Counted from the first letter of the stretch, positions 331 to 24,035 are shown. The stretch: DNA of 64,000 nucleotides from Pecten maximus (GCF_902652985.1 NC_047021.1:16864001-16928000); one strand, 5' to 3'. Notes: a model not told the origin generated them from the letters alone. A program made the numbers and translations.

Positions 331-455
331 CGGAAACTGCAACATCAGCAACCGCCATCTGTTGTTGTTTCGCCATGAAGCCGATGACAGAAAATATGAC
401 GAAGCCAGCAAACATACTGGTGCAGCTGTTGAGGATGGAGATGAGTACGGCGTCT
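331..455 (-). CDS. slc6a1: GAT1-like exon 7 (TM7: [41 protein letters not shown])
   Basis: aacag|A acceptor, G|gtaata donor, 125 nt. Confidence 0.92.
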
Positions 456-3400: not shown

Positions 3401-6400
3401 AGTCACGGACGAGCCAGTAACAGCCTTTCCCGTTCAGTTAATACCTCTCCAGATACTGCAGTACCTACCTTTTCTGTCCATCTAATACCCTTCCAGATAC
3501 TGCAATGCCTACCTTTCCTGTCCAGGTTATACCCTTCCAGATACAGAAATAACACAGCACCCAGGCAAGGAGTAGACACAGTGCCAGCTGCCAACGGACT
3601 CGTCCTGGTTCGTCAATTCCAGGGCTCACTTCCAAAACATGTCGTCTAAAAGATTCAATTGTAGTCTTCAAAATATTGCATTACATTTTCTATTATATCC
3701 TAAGGTATACTTCTTTCTGGAACTTAACACAAAAACAAAGCTGACATATGACGGTATTGTGTCGTTTCTAGAATTTTATATATGTTCTTTCAGGTTGAGT
3801 ATATTTAAATGTATATACGTAACATGTGTTATAGAGTAGTATCTACATGGTTGCCCGTATGGTTGTATGTGTATATCAAACAGATTTGATGAAACACTGC
3901 TATTATATTCTATAGAACTCATACGGGTCGGCTTTATCTTCAACCAGGATAATGTTACAGCGAAACATGTGCTTATCAAACAAAATATAACTTATTTTTA
4001 AGTCACAACGTCTGTTTTTTTGTCCTGAAGCTCCATTATACTACAAGTTATAAAAGTTACTAAATTGGACTCACTCCCAATACTCCCGAACTGGAGATGT
4101 AAATGGCATGGCGCTACAGTTGAACCCCGGATACGACATCTCCATGGCAGTAACATTCCCGCCAACCGTCGTGTTGGCTTCCGTCCAGAAAGTCCCATTC
4201 GTACAATTGTAAGAAGACCACTGGCGATCGTATTCGGATTTGCATAAGTCACTGTTCCACCAGTTGTCACAAGTGGACCAGGGAAGGATGTTCGTAAAGG
4301 AGTTAAACAGATAGTACAGTGTCCAGGCCAGAATCACAACATAGTAGATATTCAGCCAAGCGGCCATAACCGCGGCGGCATAGCCGACACCTGGAGAGGA
4401 GATATGACATTTATAAATTCGGGTATTTCGTATTTACATATTGGGTAGTAGAAAGATGACGATTAACAATGTTTAACTTGTTTCCATTTCTCAACGTGAC
4501 TTTTACTACCCCAAACTATTACCATTTATTTTACCCGTATTAGTGAGGTATTGTATCAACACTACCATTTTCGTAGCTTGGTAATTACGAGACTGATTAT
4601 ATCTCTAGCAAAAGGTAGCAAAATTTTCTTCAGGACTTTACATAATGAGCCAAAACTATTAATTCTTTTGGAAATTACAATTCATATCACGGGTGTTTTT
4701 AAGACATGCCTACCGACAATGGTATTCGCCCCTTATGAACTTGAATATAAATAACAGTTGATGTGCAAATGAATTAAACATATCTCTTAACATTTAACCA
4801 TTTCAATATACCGAAACAGCTTATTGAGAAGATGAAAACGTGGTGTGAAATGGATTTGCCATGACATTTCCTTCCCAATTACGACCATCTTGCGATATAA
4901 GTTTAAAGAAAAACTAATAAATTATAAATCTCATAAAAAAGGTAGAGTATTACCTTTGAAGATAGGAGATATCTTCCAGACACCAAGACCTCCAGTACTC
5001 TGCCATTGTCCTAGAGAGAGCTCCAAAAAGTACATAGGTATTCCGGCAAACACAGAGGTCAGGAGGTACGGGATCAGGAAGGCCCCTGGGTGTAAACGAG
5101 GGACATTTCATTGTAATATAGATCAGGAAAACACTTATCAAACTGACAAAACAACAACAATNNNNNNNNNNNNNNNNNNNNNNNNNNNNNNNNNNNNNNN
5201 NNNNNNNNNNNNNNNNNNNNNNNNNNNNNNNNNNNNNNNNNNNNNNNNNNNNNNNNNNNNNNNNNNNNNNNNNNNNNNNNNNNNNNNNNNNNNNNNNNNN
5301 CCCAAAAACTGATTGTCTGTATACTGTCTACTATAGATTGCTTTATCAGAAGTTAGATTCTCTGAAAGGTTCAGTAATCTGTCAATTTCTTAAAGATATG
5401 AAGTGTATTTTACCTCACCGAGGATATACAAGTGTACCATTACAGGAATATCAAACTACAGGTTATTAAGTCATGTTGTTTTTCAACATTCTTTGCTTGA
5501 GATACCTGCATTATAATTGATAACAACATACAAAGTAATTGTAATACATAAGTTTCATCGTCTAGTTTTGAGACTTATCATATAGAATGAACGAAATCCC
5601 TGTGTTTTATAACATTTTCTTAAATCATTGCTGGAGTGCTATATTAGATATGCGTTATATACTGAATATTTATCAGTGTTCCTTATATGTAATGAGTTAT
5701 AAAGTAAACGTAACTTCTTACATACAAATATCAATATTATATTAAAATTACTTTACTTCACCTCACTGTTAGGACGCCGCATTAACATTGCTTTTCACTT
5801 CTCAAGAAAAACGTATTTGTAACCAACCTCGCATCAGGTTTCGGGATACATTGTCATTGGCGTCGCTGCTATTGTCATTGGTGTCGCTGCTATTGTCATT
5901 GGTGTCGCTGTTATTGTCATTGGCGTCGCTACTATTGTCATTGGCGTCGCTACTATTGTCATTGGCGTCGCTGCTATTGTCATTGGTGTCGCTGTTATTG
6001 TCATTGGCGTCGCTACTATTGTCATTGGCGTCGCTACTATTGTCATTGGTGTCGCTGCTATTGTCATTGGTGTCGCTGTTATTGTCAATGGCGTCGCTGT
6101 TATTGTCATTGGTGTCGCTGCTATTGTCATTGGTGTCGCTACTATTGTCATTGGCGTCGCTACTATTGTCATTGGCGTCGCTGCTATTGTCATTGGTGTC
6201 GCTGTTATTGTCATTGGCGTCGCTACTATTGTCATTGGTGTCGCTACTATTGTCATTGGCGTCGCTACTATTGTCATTGGCGTCGCTGTTATTGTCATTG
6301 GTGTCGCTACTATTGTCATTGGTGTCGCTGTTATTGTCATTGGTGTCGCTGTTATTGTCATTGGTGTCGCTACTATTGTCATTGGTGTCGCTACTATTGT

Positions 6401-9400
6401 CATTGGCGTCGCTGCTATTGTCATTGGCGTCGCTACTATTGTCATTGGCGTCGCTACTATTGTCATTGGCGTCGCTGCTATTGTCATTGGCGTCGCTACT
6501 ATTGTCATTGGTGTCGCTACTATTGTCATTGGTGTCGCTGCTATTGTCATTGGTGTCGCTGTTATTGTCATTGGTGTCGCTGTTATTGTCATTGGTGTCG
6601 CTGCTATTGTCATTGGTGTCGCTGTTATTGTCATTGGTGTCGCTGCTATTGTCATTGGTGTCGCTGTTATTGTCATTGGTGTCGCTACTATTGTCATTGG
6701 TGTCGCTACTATTGTCATTGGTGTCGCTGCTATTGTCATTGGTGTCGCTGTTATTGTCATTGGTGTCGCTACTATTGTCATTGGTGTCGCTACTATTGTC
6801 ATTGGTGTCGCTGCTATTGTCATTGGTGTCGCTACTATTGTCATTGGTGTCGCTACTATTGTCATTGGTGTCGCTGCTTTTGTCATTGGCGTCGCTACTA
6901 TTGTCATTGGTGTCGCTGTTATTGTCATTGGTATCGCTGTTATTGTCATTATTACAGCTCCATTGTAAGAAATCAGTTCACGTGAAATTTTTCACGTGAA
7001 TTTCACATGAAAAAATTCACATAAATTTCACATGCTGTTCACATTAGTTTTACTTGAAAAAAACTAATAATCATTGTATTGATAAAAAAAGATGCTAATA
7101 TGTTATAATTTATAAAGAAGCCTTTCAAAAATATAGCAAACAAAGCAAAAAAACATCAAATAGATTCATAATGTTTTATTCAATCAATATTTAACAATAT
7201 AACAACATTTACACACCTTACTTACTTAACATCTTCTACCCTCCCTTCCATTCTCATTTTCGTTTCTCTCACAACACTGTTTTTATTTCTCTGTTTTCCT
7301 TCTTACTCTTTAACACTAGCATTTAACATGTTTCTCTATTCACCTTTCCTCTCATATTCTTATCTTCTCCCACTTCTCTTTCTCTTTCTTTTTCAACACA
7401 CCATCCATTAAATAAATCCCCCTAAAAAGTCTTGAATCCTTTTGCAATTGGCAATTTTTTTAAACAGTCCTCACTCATGGCATGTAGCATCTACTGTCAA
7501 CTGTTAATTAAATGCTAACATAAAACAATACCTGTGTTACAGGAGAAAGCACAACAGTTATAGATTTTGCAGAGTTGATGGTTTTCTTCATAGTACACAA
7601 TTCTTATGGTTCGTGTGGTTGAACTGATGTTCAGTTCCACAGACTTTAGAGATTCCAGGGCCCGAGAAGCAACACTGTACATGTAAGTCTGGGTAGAAAT
7701 CCGGATCTGCCTCCTGGGAATTTGTCAAGACATGCTGATTGCTATTCCATGATAATACCAGTTGATCTGATCAAGCCATTCTCACTCGACAAGCTGACCA
7801 CAACTCTTTCAGTCGATGATGGTCGATGAAGTTTCTTTTTAGTTTTTTTCCTTTAGGACTACAGGCTGAGGGATCAGATCTACACCTCAACACAACAAAA
7901 GTGTTTTGGCATATTGTTTTTCAGTCTGGAAAAGAATTGAAACTTTACATTATATAATTTTGGCACAAAGTGTTAAACCAATAAATCAGTATTTATTACA
8001 TACTGATTTTGTTAAAAAAGGTTTCATAAATCTTAGTAAGCAAACATTGAGACTTCAAAGAAATTGTAGAATTGAAATTACAAATTACTATTGGGATACT
8101 TGATTGACCAATAATATTGATCAAATAACAAATGGCCCAGAGGGCCTGCATTACTTACACCTGGATATTTCAGTAATCATGGCAAAATACTATCATGCAA
8201 ATTGTACTACAAATAGTTTCCTACTTTTTGAGCTGCCTCTCCTAACAATGGTTCTAACTCAAAGGTGGACTAAATCCTGTTATTCTTTAACAAGAAGGAT
8301 TTTTAATTGTTTTTATTTTTTTTAAGTTTTTTTTTTTCTTCTATTTTTACCCTATTGAGCCCCTTTTTCTGGCCCTATATAGGAGCCATACCATGTGTTT
8401 ATCATCAGATCCATTCTGGAATTCAGAAACAGTAGAGATTTAAAGGAAATATTGATGGAAGAGAATGGATAACAGACATTGCGCAAGGCGGCCCTTCAGG
8501 CAGTGCTGGTATTTAAAACACATGAGCATATTTTTCATGAGGCTTTGTCTCATCGATACCCATATATACCATTAATTAGAAAAATATTTTTGTTAAAATC
8601 AGTTAATTACACATTGTGCTTAATATGATGGTGTCAAATACAGTTTGTCTTATAATAATACAATGTGTTAATTTAGGAAAGCTATACAAACCAACAAACT
8701 GAATCATTAAAAACCATGAGACTTATCTTGTCTGGAGATATTAACCTCCTTATAATTATCATTGTGTGAATTTTGTTTTAAATATGATCTCAAGGTACAT
8801 GTATGAAGATGATAGGTCGCTGGAAAACATATAGGGTGCATACACACAACACCCGACTACTGCATGTTTATGTTTCACTGTAACATGTGACCTTTATCTT
8901 TTTGTAATTGACACAAAGACATGTACATTTGTACATGAAAAAAATACTAGAGAACGAGTCGTTTTCAATCTTAATAAATTAATATAACACGTCTTGAAGG
9001 TACCTATCATGTTAAGTGAAATCCTCTCTATTTAACATGTTTATCCTTACGCAGGGCCTTAATAAAGAATTGATAAAAAACAATCCTATCAAGTTTAAAT
9101 CACCGAGTACTTATTGAACATTCCGGTCAATTCTCTTCAGCCATCTCGCCTTTAGTAAGCCCACCAAGGCGATTTGCCTGCGAAAGGATATTCCAATTCA
9201 TCACATTTGAGGAAAACTATCAACGCGAAGACGATTAAGTTGGAATGAAGACGTGTTTTGTAGTATTTTTGAAGTATTTGTCACATTTGGTTGCGAAAGG
9301 GCTAACATTGGGAATTTAAACTATCAACGCGAAGACGATTGCATTAAAAGCCAAAACGGATCCTAAAGCAGTTTGGAATTATATTAAATCTAAATCAACA

Positions 9401-12400
9401 ACAAAGTCGGAAATCGGAGATTTGTATACAAAGACCAACGACAAAACCTCAACAAAAGTATCATCAGATATAGGGAAAGCGAATATACTCTGTAAATTCT
9501 TCAGTAGTGTATTTGTAAAGGAAGAAGATGAAGTAACTCCACAACTAAACCAACGGGAAGTTATTGAGGAAATGATAACTCTGAATATTACAAGGGAGAA
9601 AGTATTTAAACTACTGATCAACCAAAAACCGGAAAAGTCACCTGGACTGGACGAACTCCATCCAATGTTTCTCAAAAATACAGCCTCGTCATTATCAGGG
9701 CCTTTAACAACAATATTCAATCAATCACTATCAACAGGAACTCTACCAGACGATTGGAAAAAAGCCCGTGTGAGTGCTATCCATAAGAAAGGCGATAGAA
9801 GTGAAGCAGGCAACTATAGACCAGTCAGTTTAACATCAGTGGTATACAAAATTCTGGAGACATTAATAAGGGAACATTTAACCAAATTCATGAGATCTAA
9901 CAAATATTTTTCGGATAAACAATATGGGTTTATATCTGGAAGATCAACAAGTCTTCAGCTTTTGGAGGTTTTGGATATATGGACAGAAGCTCTGGATAAA
10001 GGACAGGTTGTAGATTGTATTTACATGGATTACCAGAAGGCATTCGATACAGTTCCACACAATAGACTCCTCAATAAACTAAATTCATACAACTTCTCCA
10101 ACCAAATAATCTCTTGGATAGCAAAATTCTTAAAAGGTAGACAATAAAAAGTAACTGTGAATGGTGCAGACTCTGACTGGACTGAAGTCACATCAGGAAT
10201 TCCTCAAGGCTCAGTTCTAGGACCATTAATGTTTGTCATCTTTGTAAATGACCTCCCTGAAACAGTTCAATCGGATATGTACCTTTTTGCAGACGACACC
10301 AAAGTATTCAAAATAATAAAAAGCGAGCACGACAGTGCAGAGCTTCAAAAGGATCTGGACACAATGTGTAAGTGGAGTGGTACATGGCTACTTAAGATGC
10401 ACCCAGACAAATGCAAACAGATGAGAATAGGCAAGGGAAAAGGAAGAGGACATGATGAACCCGAACCGGACTACCATCTCAACGGGAAATACCTGCAGAA
10501 AACCAAACAAGAGAAGGACATAGGAGTAATCATCGACTCCGAGCTTTCGTTTGACGAACATATATCTGAAAAAGTTAAGAAAGCGAACTCTATGTTTGCA
10601 CTCATCAGAAGGACTTTCCAGTTTATGAACACCAGGTCTTTTATCCCATTATATAAATGTCTGGTAAGATCCCAACTGGACTACGCTAGTCCTGTGTGGG
10701 CACCTCACTTACCAAAACACATCGACAAGATAGAAGGGGTTCAAAGAAGAGCAACCAAGTGTCTCCCGGGAATGAAGGAATTTATGGGGCGCCGTTTTAC
10801 TTTTTATTCCCATTTGGTGATATCACCTATTCAATCAGTGATATCACCTATTCGAATAGGTGATATCACCAATTCATTTTTCAAATAAGTGATATCACCT
10901 ATTCGAATAGGTGATATCACTTAATGAAACGAATAGGTGATATCACTTATTCGAATAGGTGATATCACTCATTCGAATAGGTGATATCACCAATTGGAAT
11001 AGGTGATATCACTTAAAAATATTCTAAAGTGATATCACCTATTTGAATAGGTGATATCACTTATAAAATTCTTAAGTGATATCATCTATTCGAATGAGTG
11101 ATATCACCTATATGAATAGGTGATATCACTTATGAAATTTTTTAAGTGATATCACCTATTCGAATGAGTGATATCACCTATTCAATCAGTGATATCACCT
11201 ATTCGAATAGGTGATATCACCAATTCATTTTTCAAATAAGTGATATCACCTATTCGTTTCATTAAGTGATATCACCTATTCGAATGAGTGATATCACCTA
11301 TTCGAATTGGTGATATCACCTATTCGTTTCAATAAGTGATATCACCTATTCGAATGGGTGATATCACTCATTTGAATAGGTGATATCACCAAATGGGAAT
11401 AAATAGTAAAACGGCGCCCCATAGGAATTGACCTACAGCGAGAGGCTGGAAAAACTCAAGCTACCAACTTTGGCATTCAGAAGAATTAGAGGAGATATGA
11501 TAGAACTGTACAAAATAATAAGCGAAATCTATGATAAAGAATGTTTTAATGGTATCATTTTATGGAAGGATGCTGCTGAACGCAACAGTACCAGAGGACA
11601 TACCAAAAAAATATTCCCTAGACTATCCACAAATACGCTAAGAAAAAACTACTTTTCAAACAGAACAGTGTCAATCTGGAATGAATTGCCCGAACAGGTT
11701 ATATCAGCATTAAATGTAAACTCCTTCAAAAACAAGCTAGACGATCACTGGAAAAACCAAAAACTTTTCTTTAATTACAAAGCATCAAGTAAATCATAAA
11801 CAATGTACAGTAGACCGGACAGAAGTACTATATCAATCTCATGTATTATTTTGAGTCTGGTATAGAGGACTTTAAAAGTCCTGAACCAGAAATAAACTTA
11901 TCTTATCTTATCTTATCTTAAACGTGTCAGGTAGGACTGTCGTCTGGTTTTGTAGATCTCGGGCCGGGCCGGCCAGTTGTCAAACTCGCCTAACATCGAT
12001 ATTAAAAGACCGTATTCTAGATTTTGGATGAACAAACATGTGTATTTACATAAAAACCTACCAATTATAAAATAGTCCGGCTGCAACTGACGAAAAATCC
12101 TCTTCTGTGCATTAAAATACCCGCAACGCAGCAGCGCGTTGTTTACACTTTTTCCGAGGTCGTAGTCCAGTAGTTTAATCGACGTAACGTTAGTCCGGAA
12201 ATTATTATAAAAATCAAACCTTTTATTTTATTTTCGGCTGTTGTTATCATAACACTTTTTTCGTCGCTAAAATAAGAACTGTAAATTAAATTTAAAAAAA
12301 TGATAATATATAATTTACTATATTTCTATGCTGGTTTAAATAAAATAAAAGCTGAAATATGTTTGTGGAACAAATCTTCACTCCTTTTTAATTTTTATGT

Positions 12401-15400
12401 TAAACACCCGAATTTCTGCTGTATTCAAAACATTTCAACAATTTAATTCAAACCAATATTAATTTCAGAATATTAATGCATCTTGATTGTAATTTCTAAC
12501 CATAAAAATACAAAACTTAGATTTCAAGAATGTGAGAATAGTGGGGCAGATGACGGGATATAGCTAGGCTTAGCCTACCACATTTAATATTTATAAGATT
12601 GTGAGAAGTCCCAAGAGCCAATCATGTATGCGACGAGAAGTATATAAAAATAAATAGATCTAGATAGATCTATAAATAAATAAGAATCAGATCTTACATT
12701 TTTTCTTTTAAACTTTGTTGTGTATAAACCGACATTAAGTACAAAGAGACTTAGGCTCAGGATGGTTTATTAATAAAAAACAAAACAAAAACAAAAAAAA
12801 CCCATTAGCTATTAGCCATTAGGTATATGGAAAAAAAGGGCCAATCATCTAATTTTCAACTGCAATTTATCCTCTTCATAACGCATAACAAGTAATATTG
12901 AATTCATATAATGCCTAATGCATTCAGATAAATAGGACAAATACAACGTTAATCAAGTTTTTAACTTTTTCCCCGCGAACCTGAAAAGGATATACATGTA
13001 TAGGCCTACATCGAAAATAGGCATAAGCCGTAATATCTTGTGTTAGCTTGCTCACAACATTCGGTAAATGTATTCTACGCTTTTTGTCGTGGTGGAGGAG
13101 CTGTTAAATACATTTTGCTAGAATTATTTTTGTATGTGAAAAAATCTCGAAAAAAAAATTCACATGAAATTCACATGAAATTTTTCACGTGAAATTCACA
13201 TGAAAAAATTCCCGTGAATTTCACGTGAATTTTTTTCACGTTAATTTCACGTGAAAAATTTCACGTGGAAAAAATATTCACGTGAATTTCACGTGAAATT
13301 TTTCACGTGTGAATTTCACGTGAAAAAATCTCACGTGAAATTCGCGTGAAGAAATATTGCCTGTGTAACACAAAGCAGACTACGTAATACCAGGTATCTG
13401 TAAGATATCGACATAATACAGTTCTTTGGAGAAGCCTTAGTCGCCGCCATAGCTGTATCCGAAACGTTTCGGGCACGGATAATACTGTATTGAAGTATAT
13501 CACAACGATTTTTATATCACTGTAAGCCATTATTTTATGAGGTTTTACTTATGCGAATCAAAAATAGCAGAAAATATGAAAGAAAAATACCACGAAGAGC
13601 AATTTTATAGCCCGATTACCGTCCTGTTTTACATAACCACCGTGTACATGATACACCGTACATATAACCAGTGTACGTACGCTTTGTATACCTGACCAGC
13701 TGGATGTGGTTAATAAGATTCCATTTCAAGTTGATCTCGCTTAAGATTACATGGGTAAGTTATACATTGTACGGTGGTACGTATATAGTTGTTGCTACCA
13801 TCCACGATAATTGCTATCGTCAAGGATGGTATCATTCAAAATGGTCGCTGTACCAGCCATATTGCACATGGATACAAATGTATATAATCTGTCTACTTTG
13901 ATTGGATCGCTAGCATACTTTATACGCAGTGGTTGGTTACCTGTTGTCTGTACTGTCATCATTCGTGGAGGTATACTTGGGGAAATTAATTACAAACAAA
14001 ATGTTATTGATAAAATCACGGCGACCCGAATATAGACAGAGATCTCTGATACGGCATTGTAGTTTGTTGTCCTTCTATTCCACGCACGGCGGCACTGTTG
14101 TTTGGTTATGGTCGGATAGAAATTCTACCGTACCAACTGACCAATAGGGTGATATCCAGGTCGTGAGACGCACTCAACACCAAATTATATCCATTTCTCA
14201 TAAATAAATTTTCAGCAAACTACGTGAACTTCCTCATCAATCTCAAACTTTACTATAGCTGCTGACTAATAAATATACGCTTTGCCATACAATCTGGATG
14301 GTCTATGTAGCCGGGAGAGACAGCCTAGTGGATGGAGGAAGTATACCATTAATTAGACTCGATTGTCTGCCTTAGTACCATTTCTCCCCGCACGGAAGCG
14401 CTCTAAATATACTGCTGCAAGTATGTTAATGCAGGGTACGACACGTAAATGGTGAACCGATTGTCATGAAAATAGACTTTGTATCACCATTTGCTGTTGA
14501 GGGCAAAAATACCTTATTACTCTGACAAGCTGTACTCAAAACGTAGGTCTGACCTCCGATTTGAAATAGTTTTTCTCTGGAGATAGCATTTTAATATTTT
14601 AATATTTTAATATTGTTTTAATATAATATTATATTATTCATATTAATACAGTAATACGACAATATCTATTGGTATTCACCTTACAAATACCGGAACCGTC
14701 CGAAACATATATCCGATATTTTCTGTCTATTTGAATTATTGGCATCCAAGAGCATCCATATTTTATCTAGGTAATAGATAAATGCCTCTTATAAAACCAT
14801 GTTCATGTTAATTTCTGAGCTTTCTGGTCTAACATACCACTTTAACAGCCATCCAGGTCCGGTACTTGGTACGTACCTACCAGCACGTATAGGTCATGAC
14901 CATAGTAATAGAAATAACATATTTATTAACAGAGACACATCAGGACATTTGCCCGTTGAATGAATGCCAATATCATATTGCATCTTATAAAATGTTTCAC
15001 CTGTTTTATGTTACACGATATATCGTAAATAAATGTAAAGGGGGGGGGGGGGGGGGGGGGCTTGTTTAAGATCATTTGTATCATGACATTGCGGATTACT
15101 TGTAAAACCTTTAATATCACAAAAGTAAAAAATAATTAAATGAAAACATTTGTCGTGCGTACACGTAGTCCGTCGTTAACAATTTACGTTTTCGACTTCT
15201 TCTCCAAAACAGCTGAAGCTTCAATGACCAAAGATCAACAAAAAATTTGAATTATATGATGCCCGACTCCAGGGGCCTGAGGGGCGGGACCAAAAAAAGT
15301 CAAAGTGACTATAATTTCAAAAATCTTCTTCTAAACTGCCAGATATGATAGAATAAAATACTCTTCATAGATAGAACGGTGGTAAGGTTCCTTACCAAAA

Positions 15401-18400
15401 GAGTGAATTTCATGCCCCTTGGGTCTCACGTTTGCCTATGGGGAGGTAGTAAACTTTACTATAGTTTATATGAGGAAATCACATTTTTGGCTATCATTAG
15501 TTTCATTTTTTATTGGAATTCATTCTAACTGGGTTAATATTATCAAAATCGGATTACAGCTTGATGGTATGCACACGTTCGCTTTGACCGACTCCCAGGG
15601 GCCTTTGAGCAGGAACAACTGAAATATTTCAAAACTCTGGTGACCGATAAGACCAATGGCTCTCTTGTTTATCTTTGGAGTAATGCTGATCTAGTACCGA
15701 ATTATATAGTATATCTTATGGAGTGAATATAATATGAATTATCATAAAGTATTACGATATCTGATATGTTTATAAGATATCCTTCGTAATTTGGTTAATT
15801 ACTTGATCAGCATTGCTTTAGGATTAAATGATAATTTGGCTTGCCATAAAAAAACATTTCTGCCGAGTGTCCCGGCAGAAATCGAACCCTGGTCTCTGGC
15901 GTGATAAGATACCAGAGCCAAAGAAGCATGCTCCGTCAGTTGAGTTACAGAGGGCCGTTACAGAGACCGTATTTAACATTATGTACAAGCTACACTAACC
16001 TACTCCTTTTAAATGTACGACCTCCACGTTATACATTTCGTCAGATTTTTTCACGGTTACACTCATGCAGGAGTTCTATCATATTATACTATGTATGACA
16101 TTTTCAGAAATCATGACATTTAAGTATGTATTTCCGTCTATGTATAAAGTTGCACCGTGATTTAAACCTATCCTAATATTATATATATTTTCTTTAAATG
16201 TTTTTAAAATTTTGCAAAGCTTTCAATCATTCAGCAAATACAGTATTATAACATTAAGAATTGTATTCCTAAGTCATTACAGTATTATTTTTGTCGATTT
16301 TGCGTGGCATTTGAGGCAGACAACTTTCTACTGAAATACAAGTTAATATCAATCCGCTGGATATACCTACCGCCTCCGTTACGGTAACACAGGTACGGGA
16401 ACCTCCATACATTTCCGAGTCCCACACAGTAGCCCACACAGGCCAATACAAACTCTAATTTCCCAGCCCAAGACTCCCTCTTGTCCTGTTCCCCAGTGTT
16501 AGCTTCCTGTCCCTGTGATTCATCGTCGTTCCCGATAGTCAGCTTCTCTACTTCGTGAACTTGGCTCATTTTACATGTGTGTTAACTTTAGCCGTAACAG
16601 ACTGTACGTTGTCGTAGGGCCCAGGTCTGTTTTATTTTATTTTAAAACTAGAACGTGAGAGTGACTTTAGTAAGTATATATAATGAAAACAAGTCATGAC
16701 CTTTAGATTTCACACCATTGGAAAGTAATTTGGCATATAATTCACTTTTTCAGTAATTCATTTCAGAAGATAAATTAATAAATCTGATGATCTATGTTCC
16801 CATACTTTTGCATACTTGGAATAGTATAACTCCAGTGCCTTGTTACATATAGTGCAATGACAGCAATTTGGCTAAATTGTGACAAATCACGCTTGGCGCT
16901 GGGTTTACATGAATATATTACACATCTAACTGTTTGTCCCTCGTCACATTGTCTGCATTACAATAAGCCTTCAACACTAGACATGCTACATTCAACGTAA
17001 AATTCAATTAGTGAATGACTCGTCCTTCGTTCGCAGATATGATTTCTTCGCATTGGTTTTTATTTTCTACTCAAAAGTTGTGTGATCGGGTGGCACGACG
17101 GTAACACACTTGTCTTTCATGTAGTCGGCTGGGGTTCGATTCCCTGACCGGAAGGTATGGAGTCGCCTGCCCGGCCACGTGGGTTTTACCCTGGTACTCC
17201 TGTTTCCTACCACGTGAGACCCCTCGCGCGCTTCCATCCGGGCCAACAAACGTCATTAACATAAGTTGATAAACCTTGTTTCGCAATTTTTGTAAAATAA
17301 AGTTAACATTTGTAATGTTGTTTTACAGACATCAATATTATATGTACCATCACGCTGCGTTTATCACCATTGTCCCTGTATCTGAATATCAAAACTATCA
17401 CTTAACTAGTTTTAGTGATGTTCAGGGATTCCTAGTCTCCTGTGAAGTAACAAAATACTAAGGTTATCTTCAATCATGTCATTTTTGGAGTAACTAGACT
17501 GGAAACGGCTGGACTTTGGTATGTTGCATATATATTTGTGTTAATTTTATCTTATTTAGATTTATGGGTAGATAATTGGCAGACTAGAATAAGATGTCGG
17601 TTATTTTTAATTAAAACTGAAGCAATGACACGTGTCACAGGGTCGTGACACACCTTTGGACTCAGTGGTCCGTATATAAATAAACGAGATGTTGAAAATT
17701 CCAGCCAAACCAAATTATGTGTATTGTGAACCAAAGTTGATCTTTTATTTATTTGTTTATTTTCATTAAACATTAAAATATTAAAAAGTATTTTTCAAGT
17801 ATTCTTCTGCATTGAATGTGTGAAAATATTTGCTTAATAACCGGTTGATAAGTTAAATATTTCACATCAGGCATGACAAAATGTTCCTGTGTATCACAGC
17901 ACAACCTCAATATTCCACGAACATGTTCTGAAGTGTATATCACGTTACATATGTATTTACACTTATGATTCCAGATTTCACAATTATAAAGGAATATTTG
18001 ATATACCATGTACACATGATTCATAATGGATGCATTTATCATTAAACGGCATGTATTACAACACATTACATTGCTATAAATCACACCATGGTTTTTATAT
18101 ATACTGATTTTAAGGCGAATAACGATAAAAGTGGATGTCACATTGTGTCAAATGTTTGTGTATTAGTTTAATGAATGTGTTCTAGATAATATAAGTATAA
18201 ATAAATATATGTATATGGATGATCCGTCCCTGGACTATAAACAAGAATCAATTAGTATATAATATTTGATATAATATTTACATTAATAATCATATAAACA
18301 CTAAAGAAAACCTGTATATATGATCCGAACGCAATCAATAGTTAATAGTTTATATATTAAATATGGGTAAAATAAAAAATAAAAAAAACAACAACAGAAT

Positions 18401-19954
18401 TTGACATTGACATTGTCACAATGAAAGCCTACTTCGTTTGTAAAACCATTGTTCAGGTTAATAACATTGTTAGTTTAAGGCTTACCCATTCTTTTATTCG
18501 AAATATCGTATAATCTTGGCTAATATGTACTTATAATAGCCAAAGTAATTGACAAAATTGGTTGGGGTTGAAACATCAACGAAAAATGACTATAAACTAT
18601 GTAGTTAGTAAAATGGAGATAACCATGACCTTTGATAAGTTGATATTTTATAAATTCATAGTCACGCCACTCATCCATCCACTTTTTCAGGGACACGTGT
18701 CGAACGATATGAATTTAGGTAATGGTTCTAAATACTAAAGCAATGTATGGTATTGTTTATATATGCTAATGAAATCATTGAACAACCAAAACAAGCATCT
18801 GTGGAATATCTTAATTGAAACTATGGAACAAACAGTCACAATGATATCTATAGGAAATCTGAAACGGCACAAAGTGTAAGATAATTCACAATAGATGTGG
18901 ATATAATAACAAAAGTTATATTAAACAATACTGTACGTTAAAACGTGGCCAGTACTATGACTGTGTTAATGCTATCAATAGTAAAACACAATATGGAAAA
19001 AGAAAATTATAATAGACCCTATTAGTCTTATATATCACAACAGTGAGTACGCCATCTAACGTGGATTTGGATTGTGGAATACATGTCTATGACTTCGTTT
19101 AAATTGATTTTCAATGTTGCTTTCAACGTTTTAGTATATGTTGTATGTTCGGCGTACGTGTAGTATTATCTTTTTGATGAAATAAATAAATTGTTGAAAC
19201 ATACATTGAAATAGCTCATAACACTGCTCAAAACCGCATGGTTTCCTTTTAGGTAAAGTTGATATTGAACACTAAATTACATTTCAGTTTTATATTGAAT
19301 ATTTCAGGGGGAATATATCTAAATAATCATTTATTATTTTAAAAAAACTTCACTCAAACTAACGCTACCTAAGGATGCAACAATTTAGATATAATTTGAT
19401 GTGAAATAATATATATATCGATCTTACACCGGTAGCATTACATCTTACAATAAGGTAATTAAGATATGCTAGGAACTTTATTTGTATGATAAATAGTAAC
19501 AATTACGAATAACCAGTTAGTATGTATTAACATTAAATTCTTTGTTTCATTTTCGGATTCTTTTCTCGAAATGTTATTATTTCGATCAAAACATTTCAGC
19601 GATGTTCTTAAAATCGTTTTCCGTGAGTTTTGACTCATCCTTAAATGAAAATAGAGACAAATGATTTTGTTATTGTGTATACATACCTCCTCCATTTTTG
19701 TAACAGAGATAAGGAAATCTCCAAACGTTCCCTAGGCCGACACACTGACCAATACAAGAAAGGATAAACTCTATCTTGTCGTTCCATGTTTCCCGTTCCT
19801 CGCTTGAATCAAGTTTCAGCTCCACCGGACGAGAATTTGGAGTCTGTGGTGATTGGCCGCTGGAGTTTGCCGTAAGGCTTGTCCTTTCATTGTTCGGAGC
19901 TTGTTGCTGCAATTCTTTGTCTTGCTGTTGTGGAATATTTTTCTCGTTTTCCAT
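331..19954 (-). CDS. slc6a1: Sodium- and chloride-dependent GABA transporter 1-like (SLC6/NSS family); multi-exon gene whose 3' part lies beyond the left edge
   Basis: Hand-spliced exons 19687-19954 or 16371-16569, then 4954-5085, 4075-4390, 3513-3645, 3090-3224, 1568-1671 and 331-455. All are GT-AG and phase-compatible. Motifs [45 protein letters not shown] (matches GAT1 TM6 as I recall it) and [14 protein letters not shown]. Confidence 0.9.
1568..1671 (-). CDS. slc6a1: GAT1-like exon 6 (TM6: [34 protein letters not shown])
   Basis: tttag|GTA acceptor, AA|gtaagt donor, 104 nt. Confidence 0.95.
2262..2385. repeat. About 3 diverged copies of a ~42-bp unit (gatgggacataacatt...gtctgtatacgacaacgg)
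   Basis: Direct repeats visible in the sequence. Confidence 0.6.
3090..3224 (-). CDS. slc6a1: GAT1-like exon 5 (TM5: [45 protein letters not shown])
   Basis: ttgcag|GTT acceptor, GGG|gtaaac donor, 135 nt. Confidence 0.95.
3413..3543 (-). repeat. Three tandem 44-bp copies of the exon 4 3' end plus splice donor
   Basis: ATCTGGAAGGGTAT...AAAG|GTAGG repeated with period 44; exon-end positions 3513, 3469 and 3425. Confidence 0.85.
3513..3645 (-). CDS. slc6a1: GAT1-like exon 4 (TM4: [44 protein letters not shown])
   Basis: ttttag|A acceptor, AAG|gtaggc donor, 133 nt. Confidence 0.95.
4075..4390 (-). CDS. slc6a1: GAT1-like exon 3 (TM3 + extracellular loop 2)
   Basis: tccag|GT acceptor, GA|gtgagt donor, 316 nt; [23 protein letters not shown]...[15 protein letters not shown]...SPVREYW. 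Confidence 0.95.
4954..5085 (-). CDS. slc6a1: GAT1-like exon 2 (TM2: [43 protein letters not shown])
   Basis: cccag|GG acceptor (phase 1), G|gtaat donor, 132 nt. Confidence 0.95.
5162..5300. other. Assembly gap
   Basis: Run of N. Confidence 1.
5850..6950. repeat. 21-bp minisatellite (attgtcattggYgtcgctRYt), ~52 copies, intronic
   Basis: Regular 21-nt periodicity; produces spurious ORFs on both strands. Confidence 0.97.
8125..8510 (+). mobile_element. Degenerate Helentron/HINE-like non-autonomous element fragment
   Basis: aacaaatggcccagagggcc...cacctg 5' hairpin motif resembles mollusc HINE-type repeats (recognition from memory). Confidence 0.4.
9338..11920 (+). mobile_element. 5'-truncated CR1-clade LINE (reverse transcriptase ORF2), inactivated
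   Basis: RT motifs [41 protein letters not shown]. One in-frame TAA at 10145-10147; MITE insertion at 10783-11423; natural stop at 11799; (TCTTA)n tail ending 11920. Confidence 0.93.
10783..11423. mobile_element. 641-bp foldback MITE with TATGG..CCATA termini and 6-bp TSD GGAATT (IS3EU-like non-autonomous element)
   Basis: TIR tatggggcgccgttttact(t/a)tttattcccatttggtgatatcacctattcaa; TSD at 10777-10782 and 11424-11429. Removing the element restores LINE frame [14 protein letters not shown]. Confidence 0.9.
15130..15670 (-). mobile_element. Helentron/HINE-like element with diverged internal repeats
   Basis: gtccgtcgttaacaattt...gacttcttctccaaaac motif; repeated ccaggggcc; ends ggtgaccgataagaccaatggctctcttgttt. 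Confidence 0.5.
16371..16569 (-). CDS. slc6a1: GAT1-like proximal first coding exon 1b (MSQVHEV...[36 protein letters not shown])
   Basis: aaaATG start; intact 199-nt frame; phase-1 donor G|gtaggt. Confidence 0.9.
17083..17305 (+). mobile_element. tRNA-derived SINE with V-domain-like core
   Basis: A box ggtggcacgacggtaa; B box ggttcgattccc; core gtgggttttaccctggtactcctgtttcctaccac; 3' part recurs at ~57295-57385. Confidence 0.75.
19687..19954 (-). CDS. slc6a1: GAT1-like distal first coding exon 1a (MENEKNIP...[36 protein letters not shown])
   Basis: caaaATG start; intact 268-nt frame; phase-1 donor G|gtatgt. Confidence 0.9.
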
Positions 19955-22900
19955 TTTGTAGATTGAAACTTAATCAAACGTTCTTATCATTACTCAAAAC
20001 CAAAATGTGAAAAATAAAAACGGAAGTCGTCACCAGATCCGGATCTTTTAGAAATATAAGAAATTTGTAGATATCAATTGCGTAAAACTTTCTCCTGTTG
20101 TAACAAAACGCATCACTGATCGGTAGCTCTATACAGATGCTGTCTCCTTCATCAGAAATAATATCCCTCCAAAGTAGCACGATCTTTCAGCAAATAAGCA
20201 ATACAGATTATTGTAATTCTCCAAAATAGTTCGCACTGGATGAAACATCGAAAAAAATTGTCAGAATTTATCCTTGAGCTTTCCTGTTTCTGTTCCCAGT
20301 TAGGTAATATTTACATAAATAAGTGCTTGTCTAAAACAGGTTTGTGGCAGAGTGCACAAAACCCTATTCTGATGCCAATGCGACAAATGTCCGTCAGATA
20401 TTTGTACAGAAAGATTTGGGTTATTAGATCAGAGAGGAAAGGTCCCAACAGTTTAATTCGCGACGTTATGAAACAGAATTGTATTGATAAACAGTTGTGA
20501 TTATATTTTATAAAATTGCTGTCAGTAACAGCCATCAGTTGTTATTGCCAAACTCTTAATAAAGTCGCAACAAATCGGCGGAAATACCAATAAATCGTTC
20601 AGAGGAAGCCAAATTAATTCCGGATTTACACGCCGCTCATTTCGGTGTATCGAAATGTCATTTTGAGAAGTGGACTGTGGAGGGAAAATCGCTAGCTGTT
20701 ACGGCAAAGGGTTATTGACAGCTGTGTATCTAATTTGCAAGGTCTCAGCAGGCCGCTCTAGAACATACGTTTTACTGATTGAATCGTATTGAATTAAATA
20801 CGTGCAAAATCCGAAATACCGTTATCCGACAAATACGACTTCTAGGTTGCATAAATTGTCACCAATTTTCTGCAAGCTAGCAAAAACATTTAATCAAAAC
20901 TTCTGGAATCTGTATAATTCATATCAGTATGTGTACACGTCATGTTCTTCAATTGTTTTACACCGTACTATAAAATGGTACTAGTACTCGAATCCATTAC
21001 AATCAATCTGTAAAGGATTCTTCATCAATTCCTCTTTCAGGATATCGTAATTGTGCCTAATCGAAATTGATACAAAGCTTTTTATTTTGTATGCAAGTCT
21101 CTGCATGTTTTAATATTGTTGTAAAGAAATCCATTTAATTAAACTATTCAGCTGTATCTTTAAAGTGTGAATGTATTCAGCAAAATAAGGCAAAGTTTGA
21201 TTATAACTTCCATGTGACTAGCGTGCGTGTGTGCAGGTTTGTTTCTAGTACAGAAGTTAATTTGATGCTTTAATTGAACTGTAAACGCGGATGTGTCACT
21301 GCCAAACAAAAGTCTTTGTGCGCCTACTGCTGAAGAAATGAATCGGCACCGCTAGCAAAATTACAACATGGAGAGAATGGTCTTTATGAATTATACTATT
21401 AAAATCACATGTTGAACCATCTGCGATAGCAGCAACTTCGCATAGACGGAATTAAAAATTGTTTGATGTGGGAGTAGCAGGTCGTCAATACACCATTATT
21501 TGGACATCGTGATCTCATTCGATAGAACAGTATCTCCTGATACAATGTAACGTTAGATGTGTTCGATGGCGATTGATAAAAAATGGTTACGTTGTCATCA
21601 TTTATCTTGAGAGCATGACGTTACCAGAATTTGACCTAGTTTTACATGGTCGTCAATGATGCACAGACACTTTCGTAACATCCGATCTTATTATCTGTGG
21701 ATATTTCCAAGGCTTCCCATGTAAATCTATTTTGTTTTTACCTCTGTCTGCATCAAAGACGATCGACTGTTCTACATTAAAGATAAATAACAGTCCCAGT
21801 TGGATTGTACAAACAAAAAGCAAAAACAACAATAAGACATTTAAAGGCGAATATATGCGCAGATTGATAGATAAACCGTCATTATACAGCTGGTTCATCC
21901 TATCGTGACTCCTCAGTTTGTCTTCGTAGTGTCAACGTTTTAACGTATGATGCATAAAAAACAAAAAGTATTCATGACATTCATAATCGTAATTACGATC
22001 ACCAACAACATACAAGACGAGATTTGTCCTCATTTTCAAATCCTAGTAACTCTTCACGTGTAAGATACGGCGAATTAGAACAAGCAAAACGGTCAAAACA
22101 TGTTAAAAATGTTAATGTAAACATTTTTCAAAACATTTTAAGGAACATTTAGGAAGAGAAAGCAGATTGGAACCGATTTCTTATCTTTAGCTTTATTTTT
22201 ACTATTCTTGGGAGAAACTATGTAATTGATTGAATTTTGTTACAGATGATTATAGATGATTACCAGTTACTGAAAAATACCTTTTAACACTTTTAAAGAC
22301 CTATGTCCCACTTAGTCAATATAGCGTGCAACTTCCTCGGTTTAAGAATAAGCTTGGCTCTTATTTGTGCAACATACATGTAGTTTCCTTCAAGATTTTT
22401 CATTAAAAATGTAGGATTCCGATGCATGTGTTACTTTAACAAGCGGCTGTTGCAAAACCTTTTCACTAAGATCAAGAGTTTAAGAGTAAAACAAGTACCA
22501 GTCCATTCGTATAGATTAAGCCGAAAATAATGCGTTTTCTTCATTATATAAAAACGCACATAACAGCCAAAATGGGAATCGTCATTTTAGATCACCAAAG
22601 ACATGCACGTGAATGTATGTAGTAAAATATTTATTTAACAATCACTGTAAAAATGGAAAACAAACTCAAGCAGGCAGGAAGACGGGCATAAAGATATATA
22701 TGTAAACATATTCACAGAATAATCGTTAACATATATACATCGGCAGCAGCAGCATCATCTATAGAATGTGCGAGTGGCTTCCTTTAAGTGAGTTACAACT
22801 GGCTGTCATACGTAAATAAATGGCCATTTCAAAAATTATTGTTTCTTCTCTTTCAGTCAATCACTTATGAGACAGCACGCTAGAAAATCACATTGCTGTC

Positions 22901-23221: not shown

Positions 23222-23773
23222 GAATATTGGTCATCCTCTGATAGGTGGTTTATGATACATGTACAATGTTGGTCATCCTCTGATAGGTGGTTTATGATAC
23301 ATGTACAATGTTGGTCATCCTCTGATAGGTGGTTTATGATACATGTACAATGTTGGTCATCCTCTGATAGGTGGTTTAGGATACATGTACAATATTGGTC
23401 ATCCTCTGATAGGTGGTTTATGATACATGTACAATATTGGTCATCCTCTGATAGGTGGTTTAGGATACATGTACAATATTGGTCATCCTCTGATAGGTGG
23501 TTTAGGATACATGTACAATATTGGTCATCCTCTGATAGGTGGTTTATGATACATGTACAATATTGGTCATCCTCTGATAGGTGGTTTAGGATACATGTAC
23601 AATATTGGTCATCCTCTGATAGGTGGTTTATGATACATGTACAATATTGGTCATCCTCTGATAGGTGGTTTATGATACATGTACAATATTGGTCATCCTC
23701 TGATAGGTGGTTTAGGATACATGTACAATATTGGTCATCCTCTGATAGGTGGTTTAGGATACATGTACAATGT
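23222..23773. repeat. 42-bp minisatellite (tattggtcatcctctgataggtggtttaKgatacatgtacaa), ~13 copies
   Basis: 42-nt periodicity. Confidence 0.97.
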
Positions 23774-23864
23774 TAATACAATGATGAACCTTAATTTGCA
23801 TTTCAAATTTATCAATGTCAGGATATCGTTGTAATTAATCAAACGTTTATTACACTTTTCCTGA

Positions 23865-24035
23865 TCATTTGATTTCTGCGGGGATTTTTAAGATTGCTCT
23901 TGCATCCCCTGGCGTGGCCTTCTTCAGTTGGATTTCTCTGAGGGTATTATTCACCTCCGCCTTTCGATGATAGTCCCAAGACAACTGAAGTTCCAGGTTC
24001 TTTTTCAGGTCGTAATCGGAAGGGTAAGGATATGT
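23865..24035 (-). CDS. cnbd2: CNBD2-like exon 18 (TYPYPSDYDLKKNLELQLSWDYHRK...EIK*)
   Basis: tgtag|ACA acceptor; TGA at 23865-23867; AATAAA at 23846-23851 on the minus strand. Confidence 0.8.
   Translation of the reverse strand, partial: TYPYPSDYDLKKNLELQLSWDYHRKAEVNNTLREIQLKKATPGDARAILKIPAEIK

What the first reader, a model, noticed from the sequence alone, without database searches (positions are those of the whole stretch)
16371..19954. GAT1-like transporter with two interchangeable N-terminus+TM1 exons that swap a substrate-pocket residue (Tyr vs Gln)
Seen: two exons 3.1 kb apart, each with its own ATG, an unrelated cytoplasmic N-tail, a full TM1 and the same phase-1 donor after NGG-G. 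Both join the single exon 2 (5085) in frame, and no other SLC6 exons lie between them. Both are stop-free with many synonymous differences but a conserved [12 protein letters not shown], which suggests both are under selection. Proximal reads [11 protein letters not shown]; distal reads [11 protein letters not shown]. Established: this position is GAT1 Tyr60 in the S1 site, and it varies with specificity across the GABA subfamily (Glu in GAT2/GAT3/BGT1, Gly in TauT, Phe in CreaT). The shared body has the GAT1-type TM3 Leu (WLNIYY) and TM6 (FSYGLGL). Inference: alternative promoters build two transporters with different substrate selectivity or kinetics from one gene body, for example a neuronal GABA carrier and an osmolyte carrier (betaine, beta-alanine or taurine). 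This variable-first-exon design changes the binding site itself, not just the tail.
Basis: partly seen in the sequence, partly recalled or inferred. Interest (0 to 1): 0.78.

Follow-up and report, generated by a model that had tools for sequence, protein, structure and literature searches.

The report
Scallop GAT-1 gene, two TM1 first exons
The king scallop's GABA-transporter-1 gene has two interchangeable first exons, each encoding its own N-terminal tail and first membrane helix and differing at a substrate-pocket residue (Gln or Tyr); the design is conserved in scallops and grows to three exons in mussels, so it is a natural experiment in transporter specificity that has not been tested.

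Summary
On the minus strand, two intact TM1-encoding first exons (distal 19954-19687, Gln; proximal 16569-16371, Tyr) lie upstream of one SLC6 gene body. Exon 2 starts at 5085. No other SLC6 exon lies within 84 kb.

The gene is the Pecten maximus GAT-1 orthologue. RefSeq XP_033745580.1 begins with the distal exon joined to exon 2. The proximal Tyr exon appears in no P. maximus protein I retrieved.

Four scallop genera (five loci) keep both exons in the same order. ATGs and phase-1 G|GT donors are intact, except that one Argopecten copy has a frameshifted Tyr-exon tail. Omega is 0.03-0.21 at dS 0.8 or more. Conserved non-coding sequence is found only directly upstream of each exon, which suggests two promoters.

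Public models use the Gln exon in Pecten and Argopecten, and the Tyr exon in Mizuhopecten and Ylistrum. Mytilus has three such exons (Leu, Tyr, Phe); the Tyr and Phe forms are RefSeq isoforms X1 and X2. A Phe-type cDNA was cloned from mussel gill.

Gln aligns with GAT1 Tyr60. It is the usual form in gastropods, clams and oysters, so the Tyr exon is the addition.

I found no RNA junction evidence in Pecten itself. Different substrate selectivity remains untested.

The parts
19687..19954 (-). Distal first exon (Gln type). ATG, a 53-residue tail with the motif RPVELKL, TM1 reading ...[11 protein letters not shown]..., and a phase-1 donor G|GTATGT.
   Evidence: It is identical to the N-terminus of RefSeq XP_033745580.1. 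It is conserved in 4 scallop genera with omega 0.03-0.11.
19955..21339 (-). Conserved non-coding block directly upstream of the Gln exon. Candidate promoter and 5' UTR.
   Evidence: blastn gives 72-76% identity over 1.4-1.7 kb to Ylistrum, Mizuhopecten and Argopecten. The rest of the intergenic and intronic sequence does not align.
16371..16569 (-). Proximal first exon (Tyr type). ATG, a 30-residue tail, TM1 reading ...[11 protein letters not shown]..., and a phase-1 donor G|GTAGGT. It is not part of any P. maximus protein I retrieved.
   Evidence: Its orthologues form the N-terminus of the Mizuhopecten XP_021344054.1 and Ylistrum XP_060076867.1 models. Omega is 0.12-0.21.
16570..16960 (-). 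Conserved non-coding block directly upstream of the Tyr exon. Candidate second promoter. Conservation fades in the last ~80 bases before the ATG, and there is no conserved acceptor.
   Evidence: alignment A2; several invariant 10-20 base blocks in four species.
4954..5085 (-). Shared exon 2 (end of TM1b and TM2), with a phase-1 acceptor.
   Evidence: It is 100% identical to the RefSeq protein.
4075..4390 (-). Exon 3 (TM3 with WLNIYY, and extracellular loop 2).
3513..3645 (-). Exon 4 (TM4).
3090..3224 (-). Exon 5 (TM5).
1568..1671 (-). Exon 6 (TM6, [13 protein letters not shown]1 type).
   Evidence: best solved matches are GAT1 chains; 33 of 35 residues identical to 8gnk_A.
331..455 (-). Exon 7 (TM7). 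Six more exons lie below the window: L033:886-998 and L033:431-562, then four in L031, about 10.4 to 12.5 kb below the window start.
5086..16370 (-). Intron 1 as seen from the Tyr exon. It holds the N run 5162-5300, a 21-base tandem array at 5850-6950, reverse-transcriptase ORFs on the + strand at 9422-10888, and no SLC6 exon.

Best explanation
This is the king scallop (Pecten maximus) orthologue of the invertebrate GABA transporter GAT-1 (SLC6A1-like). It carries a small array of two mutually exclusive first coding exons.

Each exon has its own ATG, its own cytoplasmic tail and a complete TM1. Each ends in the same phase-1 donor, and each is most likely driven by its own promoter. Either exon is spliced to the single exon 2.

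The result is two proteins that share TM2-TM12. They differ in the N-terminal tail and, within TM1, essentially only at the residue equivalent to GAT1 Tyr60, which is Gln in the distal exon and Tyr in the proximal one.

Shown here:
- the exon anatomy;
- the single gene body;
- conservation and purifying selection of both exons in four scallop genera;
- a conserved upstream non-coding block for each exon;
- public gene models that use each exon in different scallops;
- a homologous three-exon array (Leu, Tyr, Phe) in Mytilus with two annotated isoforms;
- the alignment of the swapped residue to Tyr60.

Inferred:
- both forms are made in Pecten;
- they are made from separate promoters, probably in different tissues;
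- the swap changes affinity, kinetics, pharmacology or substrate range.
For: - **Anatomy and single body:**
- **Identity:** P0412 (XP_033745580.1, P. maximus, on a contig of 46,316,487 bases, the length of C7) starts with the distal exon exactly. It matches the body exons at about 94-100% in tblastn; apparent mismatches sit at HSP ends that run past exon boundaries into intron.
- **Closest solved structure:** GAT1 at 760 bits, against 676 for GAT3 and 664 for TauT. Gln70 aligns with Tyr60. TM3 Leu/Tyr, TM6 FSYG and TM8 Ser/Thr are conserved.
- **Same order in other scallops:** Gln exon, Tyr exon, exon 2 in Mizuhopecten, Argopecten (two loci) and Ylistrum. ATGs and G|GT donors are intact in all but one Argopecten copy, where the Tyr-exon tail is frameshifted.
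- **Selection (NG86):** Gln exon dN 0.055-0.096, dS 0.89 to saturated. Tyr exon dN 0.11-0.28, dS 0.77-2.2.
- **Candidate promoters:** only the 1.4 kb upstream of the Gln exon and the 0.4 kb upstream of the Tyr exon still align between genera.
- **Use of each exon in public models:** Gln in Pecten and Argopecten, Tyr in Mizuhopecten and Ylistrum. Their bodies are 93-94% identical to the Pecten body.
- **Mytilus galloprovincialis:** three intact exons (Leu, Tyr, Phe) lie before one exon 2. Isoforms X1 (Tyr) and X2 (Phe) read identically from exon 2 over the stretch compared, about 60 residues.
- **RNA-level support in relatives:** an intron-free 2197-base Logan contig encodes a Tyr-type full-length protein. 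The Phe-type Bathymodiolus GAT-1 cDNA came from gill (PMC3849432).
- **The residue matters in the family:** hGAT1 Tyr60 hydrogen-bonds GABA. Tyr60Glu in GAT1 and Glu66Tyr in GAT3 abolish transport (PMC12916826). CreaT Phe68Tyr with two other changes gives GABA transport (PMC7148354).
Against: - I obtained no RNA reads or junctions for either exon in Pecten. The four runs laid showed only short matches from a paralogue's TM1 motif and a repeat.
- No P. maximus protein with the Tyr exon is in the searched collection.
- RefSeq and other gene models can be built partly from homology, so they are not proof of transcription.
- One of the two Argopecten copies has a frameshifted Tyr-exon tail.
- Position 60 is Leu in insect GAT-1 orthologues. 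From my own knowledge these transport GABA, so the swap need not change the substrate.
Confidence: 0.8

Rival explanations
1. Both first exons are used, but the Gln/Tyr difference has no effect on transport. The isoforms would differ only in regulation, through their promoters and N-terminal tails (trafficking, partner binding).
For: The tails are unrelated in sequence and length. The orthologues in other phyla carry Leu (insects) or Tyr (Lingula, nemerteans) at this site. All other TM1 pocket residues are identical in the two exons.
Against: Gln is invariant in the distal exon and Tyr in the proximal exon in all four scallop genera. Gln is fixed across the gastropod, clam and oyster orthologues examined. 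Changes at this position abolish or redirect transport in GAT1, GAT3 and CreaT. Mussels add a third residue, Phe, in a third exon.
Confidence: 0.3
2. Only the distal Gln exon is used in Pecten maximus, as in its RefSeq model. The proximal Tyr exon would be an unused or decaying relic of an exon duplication.
For: The only P. maximus protein retrieved uses the Gln exon. One Argopecten copy has a broken Tyr-exon tail. No RNA support was found.
Against: Omega is 0.12-0.21 at dS 0.8-2.2, with ATG and donor intact in four genera. A conserved 0.4 kb block lies just upstream of the exon, while the neighbouring intron no longer aligns. The exon is the N-terminus of the Mizuhopecten and Ylistrum models, and of Tyr-type mussel isoforms and an mRNA contig.
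Confidence: 0.1
3. The distal exon is a separate small gene or pseudogene, as annotated in Mizuhopecten (a 91-residue 'GABA transporter 2'), or it is the product of a mis-assembled or collapsed paralogue.
For: Mizuhopecten's annotation calls it a gene of its own.
Against: The same arrangement is present in five loci of four independent assemblies. The Gln exon is the regular first exon of the orthologue in clams, oysters and gastropods. It is joined to exon 2 in the Pecten and Argopecten RefSeq models. It is under strong purifying selection. A lone TM1 has no known function.
Confidence: 0.03

Closest known systems
Vertebrate GAT1 (SLC6A1) and invertebrate GAT-1, e.g. Bathymodiolus septemdierum GAT-1 (Kinjo et al. 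2013, PMC3849432)
   Same: It is the best match among solved structures. The TM3, TM6 and TM8 pocket residues are the same. It falls in the clade of molluscan GAT-1-like proteins. The Tyr isoform also has Tyr60.
   Different: No alternative TM1 exons have been described for GAT1. The standard scallop form has Gln in place of Tyr60. The published mussel cDNA is the Phe-type exon, and the paper does not mention isoforms.
Mytilus GAT-1-like isoforms X1 and X2 (RefSeq XP_076070542.1 and XP_076070549.1)
   Same: It is the orthologous locus, with the same upstream cNMP-binding neighbour. Alternative first exons each carry TM1, share a phase-1 donor and join one exon 2. The pocket residue differs between exons.
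   Different: Mussels have three exons (Leu, Tyr, Phe) and scallops two (Gln, Tyr). The Leu exon is unannotated in that Mytilus model, and so is the Tyr exon in Pecten.
Variable-first-exon gene clusters (UGT1A, clustered protocadherins). Compared from my own knowledge, not tested here.
   Same: Several first exons, each presumably with its own promoter, encode the specificity-determining part and splice to common downstream exons.
   Different: The array is tiny (2-3 exons). The variable part is one helix plus a tail. Use of separate promoters has not been shown.
N-terminal isoforms of SLC6 transporters (GlyT1a/b/c, GlyT2a/b). Compared from my own knowledge.
   Same: Alternative promoters or first exons give different cytoplasmic N-termini on one transporter body.
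   Different: In those cases TM1 and the binding site are shared. Here TM1 itself, with a pocket residue, is exchanged.

Membership tests
SLC6 / NSS (Pfam SNF, PF00209) | Significant match to the SNF profile, including the TM1 motif G-x-G-N-x-W-R-F-P-Y | tested here: met
   Both first exons match SNF positions 1-39/40 at 71.2 and 67.3 bits. The RefSeq protein aligns with solved SLC6 chains over most of its length apart from a gap in extracellular loop 2.
GAT-1 (SLC6A1) orthologue group | Closer to GAT1 than to GAT2/3, BGT1, TauT, CreaT or the monoamine and glycine transporters | tested here: met
   GAT1 chains score 756-760 bits, GAT3 670-676, TauT 649-664, BGT1 643 and CreaT 625. The protein groups with molluscan GAT-1-like proteins. 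No vertebrate sequence was in that tree.
GAT-1 (SLC6A1) orthologue group | GAT1-type substrate-site residues: Leu136/Tyr140 in TM3, Phe294-Ser-Tyr-Gly in TM6, Ser396/Thr400 in TM8 | tested here: met
   In the alignment to 7y7v_[17 protein letters not shown] and DSQFCT are conserved.
GAT-1 (SLC6A1) orthologue group | Tyr at the Tyr60 position of TM1 | tested here: inconclusive
   Met by the proximal exon (Tyr). Not met by the distal exon (Gln70 aligns with Tyr60). Insect orthologues have Leu, so the residue does not define the orthologue group outside vertebrates.
GAT-1 (SLC6A1) orthologue group | Na+/Cl--coupled GABA transport | not testable with these tools
   I found no transport data for any molluscan GAT-1. 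Kinjo et al. 2013 did not assay function.
Alternative first-exon (variable-exon) array | Two or more first exons with their own start codons, the same splice phase and one common acceptor | tested here: met
   Also true of the three exons in Mytilus.
Alternative first-exon (variable-exon) array | Each exon has its own promoter or transcription start site | tested here: inconclusive
   A conserved non-coding block lies directly upstream of each exon, with no conserved acceptor before the Tyr exon's ATG. No TSS data were available.
Alternative first-exon (variable-exon) array | Transcripts that join each first exon to the common exon 2 in the same species | tested here: inconclusive
   Pecten: no reads on either exon in four runs, and only the Gln form is in RefSeq. 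Mytilus: two annotated isoforms. Different scallops are annotated with different exons.

The most novel reading that the evidence does not exclude
Pteriomorph bivalves keep a conserved array of interchangeable TM1 exons in GAT-1: Gln and Tyr in scallops; Leu, Tyr and Phe in mussels. In this reading the array re-tunes the S1 substrate pocket of one transporter body. It would yield tissue-specific carriers with different substrate range or affinity, for example synaptic GABA clearance versus uptake of other beta/gamma-amino acids or osmolytes in gill. That would be specificity switching by promoter choice within a single SLC6 gene.
Probability: 0.3. Interest if true: 0.8.

Novelty: new variant of a known kind. 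Interest (0 to 1): 0.62.

Why it matters
The TM1 residue at the GAT1 Tyr60 position is a known determinant of substrate and inhibitor selectivity in the GABA-transporter subfamily. Here nature exchanges that residue, and almost nothing else in the membrane domain, on a constant body, and has kept the arrangement across scallops and mussels.

That gives a ready-made, evolution-vetted set of two or three 'point-swap' transporters for testing how this position sets specificity. It also points to a way for animals to diversify transporter function without gene duplication.

For annotation, it shows three errors in current public gene models:
- the Tyr exon in Pecten is missed;
- the Leu exon in Mytilus is missed;
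- the Gln exon in Mizuhopecten is mis-called as a separate 91-residue gene.

Tried and rejected
- **RNA evidence.** The look-up of sequencing runs listed no holder of the stretch. Read laying on 16200-20100 with four same-species runs gave no contig on either exon. The apparent joint 16422->19747 is one paralogue contig matching the conserved TM1 motif in both exons, with 25-32 base sides, 8 foreign letters between them and 90-95% likeness, so I rejected it as a junction.
- **Composite alignment.** I tried aligning a chiton full-length protein with the separate Pecten exon peptides to fish for full-length relatives. MAFFT scattered the fragments, so I abandoned it.
- **Joined model.** I built no spliced model and sent none to any tool. 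Exons were searched one by one by reference. The full-length comparison used the public RefSeq protein that the listing of cluster members returned.
- **Representative search.** The search with the distal exon found only short genomic ORFs of the Gln type, because isoforms collapse in 50% clusters.
- **Failed look-ups.** The Mytilus X2 and Saccostrea X2 loci are not on record.
- **Origin of the Tyr exon.** I considered capture from a lost tandem paralogue, since Solemya has two complete tandem genes. The gene order there is Tyr gene then Leu gene, opposite to the exon order in scallops and mussels. In-gene exon duplication therefore looks simpler, but this is unresolved.
- **Other blanks.** The earlier-findings look-up returned nothing. 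Three paper searches found no description of alternative TM1 exons in an SLC6 gene.


Full report
**1. What is in the sequence**

The gene lies on the minus strand.

- Distal exon: it opens with ATG at 19954 and runs 89 codons to a donor G|GTATGT after 19687.
- Proximal exon: it opens with ATG at 16569 and runs 66 codons to G|GTAGGT after 16371.
- Both leave one G as the first base of a codon.
- Exon 2 begins at 5085 behind a pyrimidine-rich cccag acceptor and supplies the missing two bases. Either exon then continues ...[12 protein letters not shown].
- Both exons match the first 39-40 positions of Pfam SNF, at 71.2 and 67.3 bits.

The tails before TM1 are unrelated: 53 residues in the distal exon and 30 in the proximal one. 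In the 36-residue TM1 part the exons differ at nine positions. Eight of those are conservative. The ninth is Gln (distal) versus Tyr (proximal), in ...G-[Q/Y][14 protein letters not shown].

I ran tblastn with several full-length SLC6 proteins against the window plus 20 kb below it and 10 kb above. It finds each body exon once and no further TM1 exon:

- exons 2-7 lie in the window between 5085 and 331;
- six more exons lie below the window in L033 and L031.

Intron 1 holds a 139-base N run (5162-5300), a 21-base tandem array and reverse-transcriptase ORFs on the other strand. I did not fill the N run. It is too short to hide a third exon of this kind, and gap-free loci of other scallops have only two.

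**2. Identity**

The word search with the distal exon found a 91-residue Mizuhopecten yessoensis model, 85% identical over its whole length, and four short genomic ORFs of the same Gln type.

Through a chiton GAT-1-like protein I reached the full-length scallop proteins. A cluster look-up then returned XP_033745580.1, named 'sodium- and chloride-dependent GABA transporter 1-like [Pecten maximus]'. It has 646 residues and lies on a contig of 46,316,487 bases, the length of the window's contig C7.

That protein begins with the distal exon exactly. It matches the body exons at about 94-100% in tblastn, and the apparent mismatches sit at HSP ends that run past exon boundaries into intron. So the window is from P. 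maximus, and RefSeq already joins the distal Gln exon to exon 2. No P. maximus protein with the proximal exon is in the 90% clusters that would hold it.

Against all solved structures the protein is closest to GAT1: 760 bits, against 676 for GAT3, 664 for TauT, 643 for BGT1 and 625 for CreaT. In that alignment:

- Gln70 sits on Tyr60 of chain 7y7v_A;
- TM3 WLNIYY, TM6 [10 protein letters not shown] and TM8 DSQFCT are conserved.

The distal exon searched alone scores best with GAT3, and its Gln then sits on GAT3 Glu66.

**3. Are both exons real?**

Loci from three other scallop genera were fetched:

- Mizuhopecten, L034;
- Argopecten irradians, two copies of the locus, L068 and L069;
- Ylistrum balloti, L070.

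All five scallop loci have the order Gln exon, Tyr exon (3-8 kb further on), exon 2. Every exon has its ATG and its G|GT donor in phase 1. The one exception is the Tyr exon of Argopecten copy L068, whose tail is frameshifted.

Pairwise Nei-Gojobori estimates:

| Exon | dN | dS | omega |
|---|---|---|---|
| Gln | 0.055-0.096 | 0.89 to saturated | 0.03-0.11 |
| Tyr | 0.11-0.28 | 0.77-2.2 | 0.12-0.21 |

At this divergence neutral sequence no longer aligns. Between Pecten and the other three genera only four things still align in the 19 kb from the upstream neighbour to exon 2:

- the two first exons;
- exon 2;
- a 1.4 kb block directly upstream of the Gln exon (window 21339-19955);
- a 0.4 kb block directly upstream of the Tyr exon (16960-16570).

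The block before the Tyr exon contains several invariant stretches of 10-20 bases. It loses conservation about 80 bases before the ATG and has no conserved acceptor. This is the pattern expected of a promoter with its 5' UTR, not of an internal exon.

Public models use the Gln exon in Pecten and Argopecten, and the Tyr exon in Mizuhopecten (XP_021344054.1) and Ylistrum (XP_060076867.1). The bodies of those proteins are 93-94% identical to the Pecten body. In Mizuhopecten the unused Gln exon was annotated as a separate 91-residue gene.

**4. Beyond scallops**

| Taxon | First exons found |
|---|---|
| Mytilus galloprovincialis (L071) | Leu type with a Gln-lineage tail motif (unannotated), Tyr (isoform X1), Phe (isoform X2), then one exon 2 |
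| Ruditapes (L072) | Gln only |
| Saccostrea (L073) | Gln only |
| Gastropod orthologues retrieved | Gln, with the same R-x-V-E-x-K-L tail motif |
| Solemya (L074) | Two complete tandem genes, Tyr then Leu, bodies 66% identical |

The Mytilus locus is syntenic: the same cNMP-binding gene lies upstream. All three Mytilus exons are intact with phase-1 G|GT donors, and X1 and X2 read identically from exon 2 over the stretch I compared (about 60 residues).

The published Bathymodiolus GAT-1 cDNA, cloned from gill RNA with a 5'-end cloning step, is of the Phe type. A 2197-base intron-free Logan contig (run SRR34486204), which groups with mussels, encodes a full-length Tyr-type protein. Junctions of Tyr-type and Phe-type exons to the common body therefore exist as RNA in mussels.

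In a quick ML tree of the bodies, the scallop body sits with the other autobranch bivalves. The Solemya Tyr gene pairs with a cephalopod Tyr-type gene.

Gln is therefore the standard molluscan state of this gene. The Tyr exon is an addition shared by scallops and mussels and absent from the one oyster examined. Whether it arose by exon duplication inside the gene or from an old paralogue is open. The exon order argues for duplication.

**5. What the swap may do**

- In hGAT1, Tyr60 hydrogen-bonds the amino group of GABA.
- The position is Glu in GAT2, GAT3 and BGT1.
- Tyr60Glu in GAT1 and Glu66Tyr in GAT3 nearly abolish transport (PMC12916826).
- CreaT Phe68Tyr, together with two other changes, gives GABA transport (PMC7148354).
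- Within this genome the position is one of the most variable in TM1. Among 26 paralogous first exons read it is Y, V, F, L, Q, G, M, T or C, and the distal exon is the only one with Gln.

These facts make a functional effect plausible. They do not say what the effect is.

Insect orthologues carry Leu and, from my own knowledge, transport GABA. Species with only the Gln form presumably clear GABA with it. I therefore commit to two promoter-driven isoforms that share a body and differ in tail and pocket residue, most likely with different affinity, kinetics or inhibitor profile and different tissue use. I rate a true change of substrate at about 0.3.

**6. Limits**

- No run listed held the stretch. 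The four runs laid gave no contig on either exon, only a paralogue's motif and a repeat at 17117-17378.
- Use of both exons in Pecten itself is therefore inferred from selection, conserved upstream blocks, and models and RNA in relatives.
- Gene models may lean on homology.
- The exons are short, so the dN/dS values are rough, and dS is near saturation.
- I met no human-like contig, built no joined spliced model and filled no N.

**7. Verdict**

The structural interpretation is supported and extended: the design is conserved in Pectinidae and has three exons in Mytilus. The functional interpretation is untested, and its polarity is probably reversed.

The two isoform types are visible in public annotation of different species. 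I found no paper that describes alternative TM1 exons in an SLC6 gene. I file it as a new variant of a known kind, namely alternative first exons or variable-exon arrays.

Noticed in passing
L071:6882-7136 (Mytilus galloprovincialis, GCA_965363235.1): A third intact TM1 first exon lies 3 kb upstream of the annotated start of the Mytilus GAT-1-like gene. It has Leu at the pocket position, a Gln-lineage tail motif, an ATG and a G|GTGAGT donor. It is not part of isoforms X1 or X2.
   Followed up: partly
L068 and L069 (Argopecten irradians CM084275.1, about 75 kb apart): The whole locus, including the upstream cNMP-binding gene fragment, is present twice and encodes identical proteins. In copy L068 the tail of the Tyr exon is frameshifted. 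This could be a recent segmental duplication or an uncollapsed haplotype.
   Followed up: partly
L034:10001-10530 (Mizuhopecten yessoensis): The Gln exon is annotated as a separate 91-residue gene named 'GABA transporter 2', 7.5 kb upstream of the 624-residue model that starts with the Tyr exon. This is probably an annotation split of one gene.
   Followed up: yes
L074 (Solemya velum JBHNWI010000513.1): Two complete GAT-1-like genes lie in tandem on one strand. A Tyr-type gene (614 aa) is followed by a Leu-type gene (646 aa) with a 45 kb first intron. Their bodies are 66% identical. The Tyr gene pairs with a cephalopod gene in the tree.
   Followed up: partly
window 17117-17378: A short interspersed repeat between the two first exons has high contig depth in all four runs laid. 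Many contigs break off at 17217 and 17249. It is likely a SINE-like element transcribed from many copies.
   Followed up: no
window 9422-10888 (+) and 10816-11390: Reverse-transcriptase-like ORFs (241 and 243 aa) of a retroelement lie on the opposite strand inside intron 1. They are followed by a degenerate tandem array built on a GTGATATCAC palindrome.
   Followed up: no
window 5850-6950 and 23223-23771: Two clean minisatellites: 21 bases x 52 copies (93% matches) in intron 1, and 42 bases x 13 copies (98% matches) between the transporter gene and its upstream neighbour.
   Followed up: no
window 23857-24000: This stretch aligns at 78% with the last part of the cNMP-binding-domain gene that lies upstream of the orthologue in Ylistrum. 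The same neighbour precedes the gene in Mizuhopecten, Argopecten, Mytilus and Ruditapes, but not in Saccostrea.
   Followed up: partly
G000, whole genome: About 98 TM1-type SLC6 exons are present in the genome, so the family is greatly expanded. The residue at the GAT1 Tyr60 position varies widely among the 26 paralogous first exons read (Y, V, F, L, Q, G, M, T, C).
   Followed up: partly
P0122, P0123, P0127, P0134: Gene models from other, unnamed organisms contain two TM1 motifs in series. In one of them the two copies differ at the pocket residue (Cys versus Asn). These may be further cases of tandem TM1 exons read through by gene predictors.
   Followed up: no
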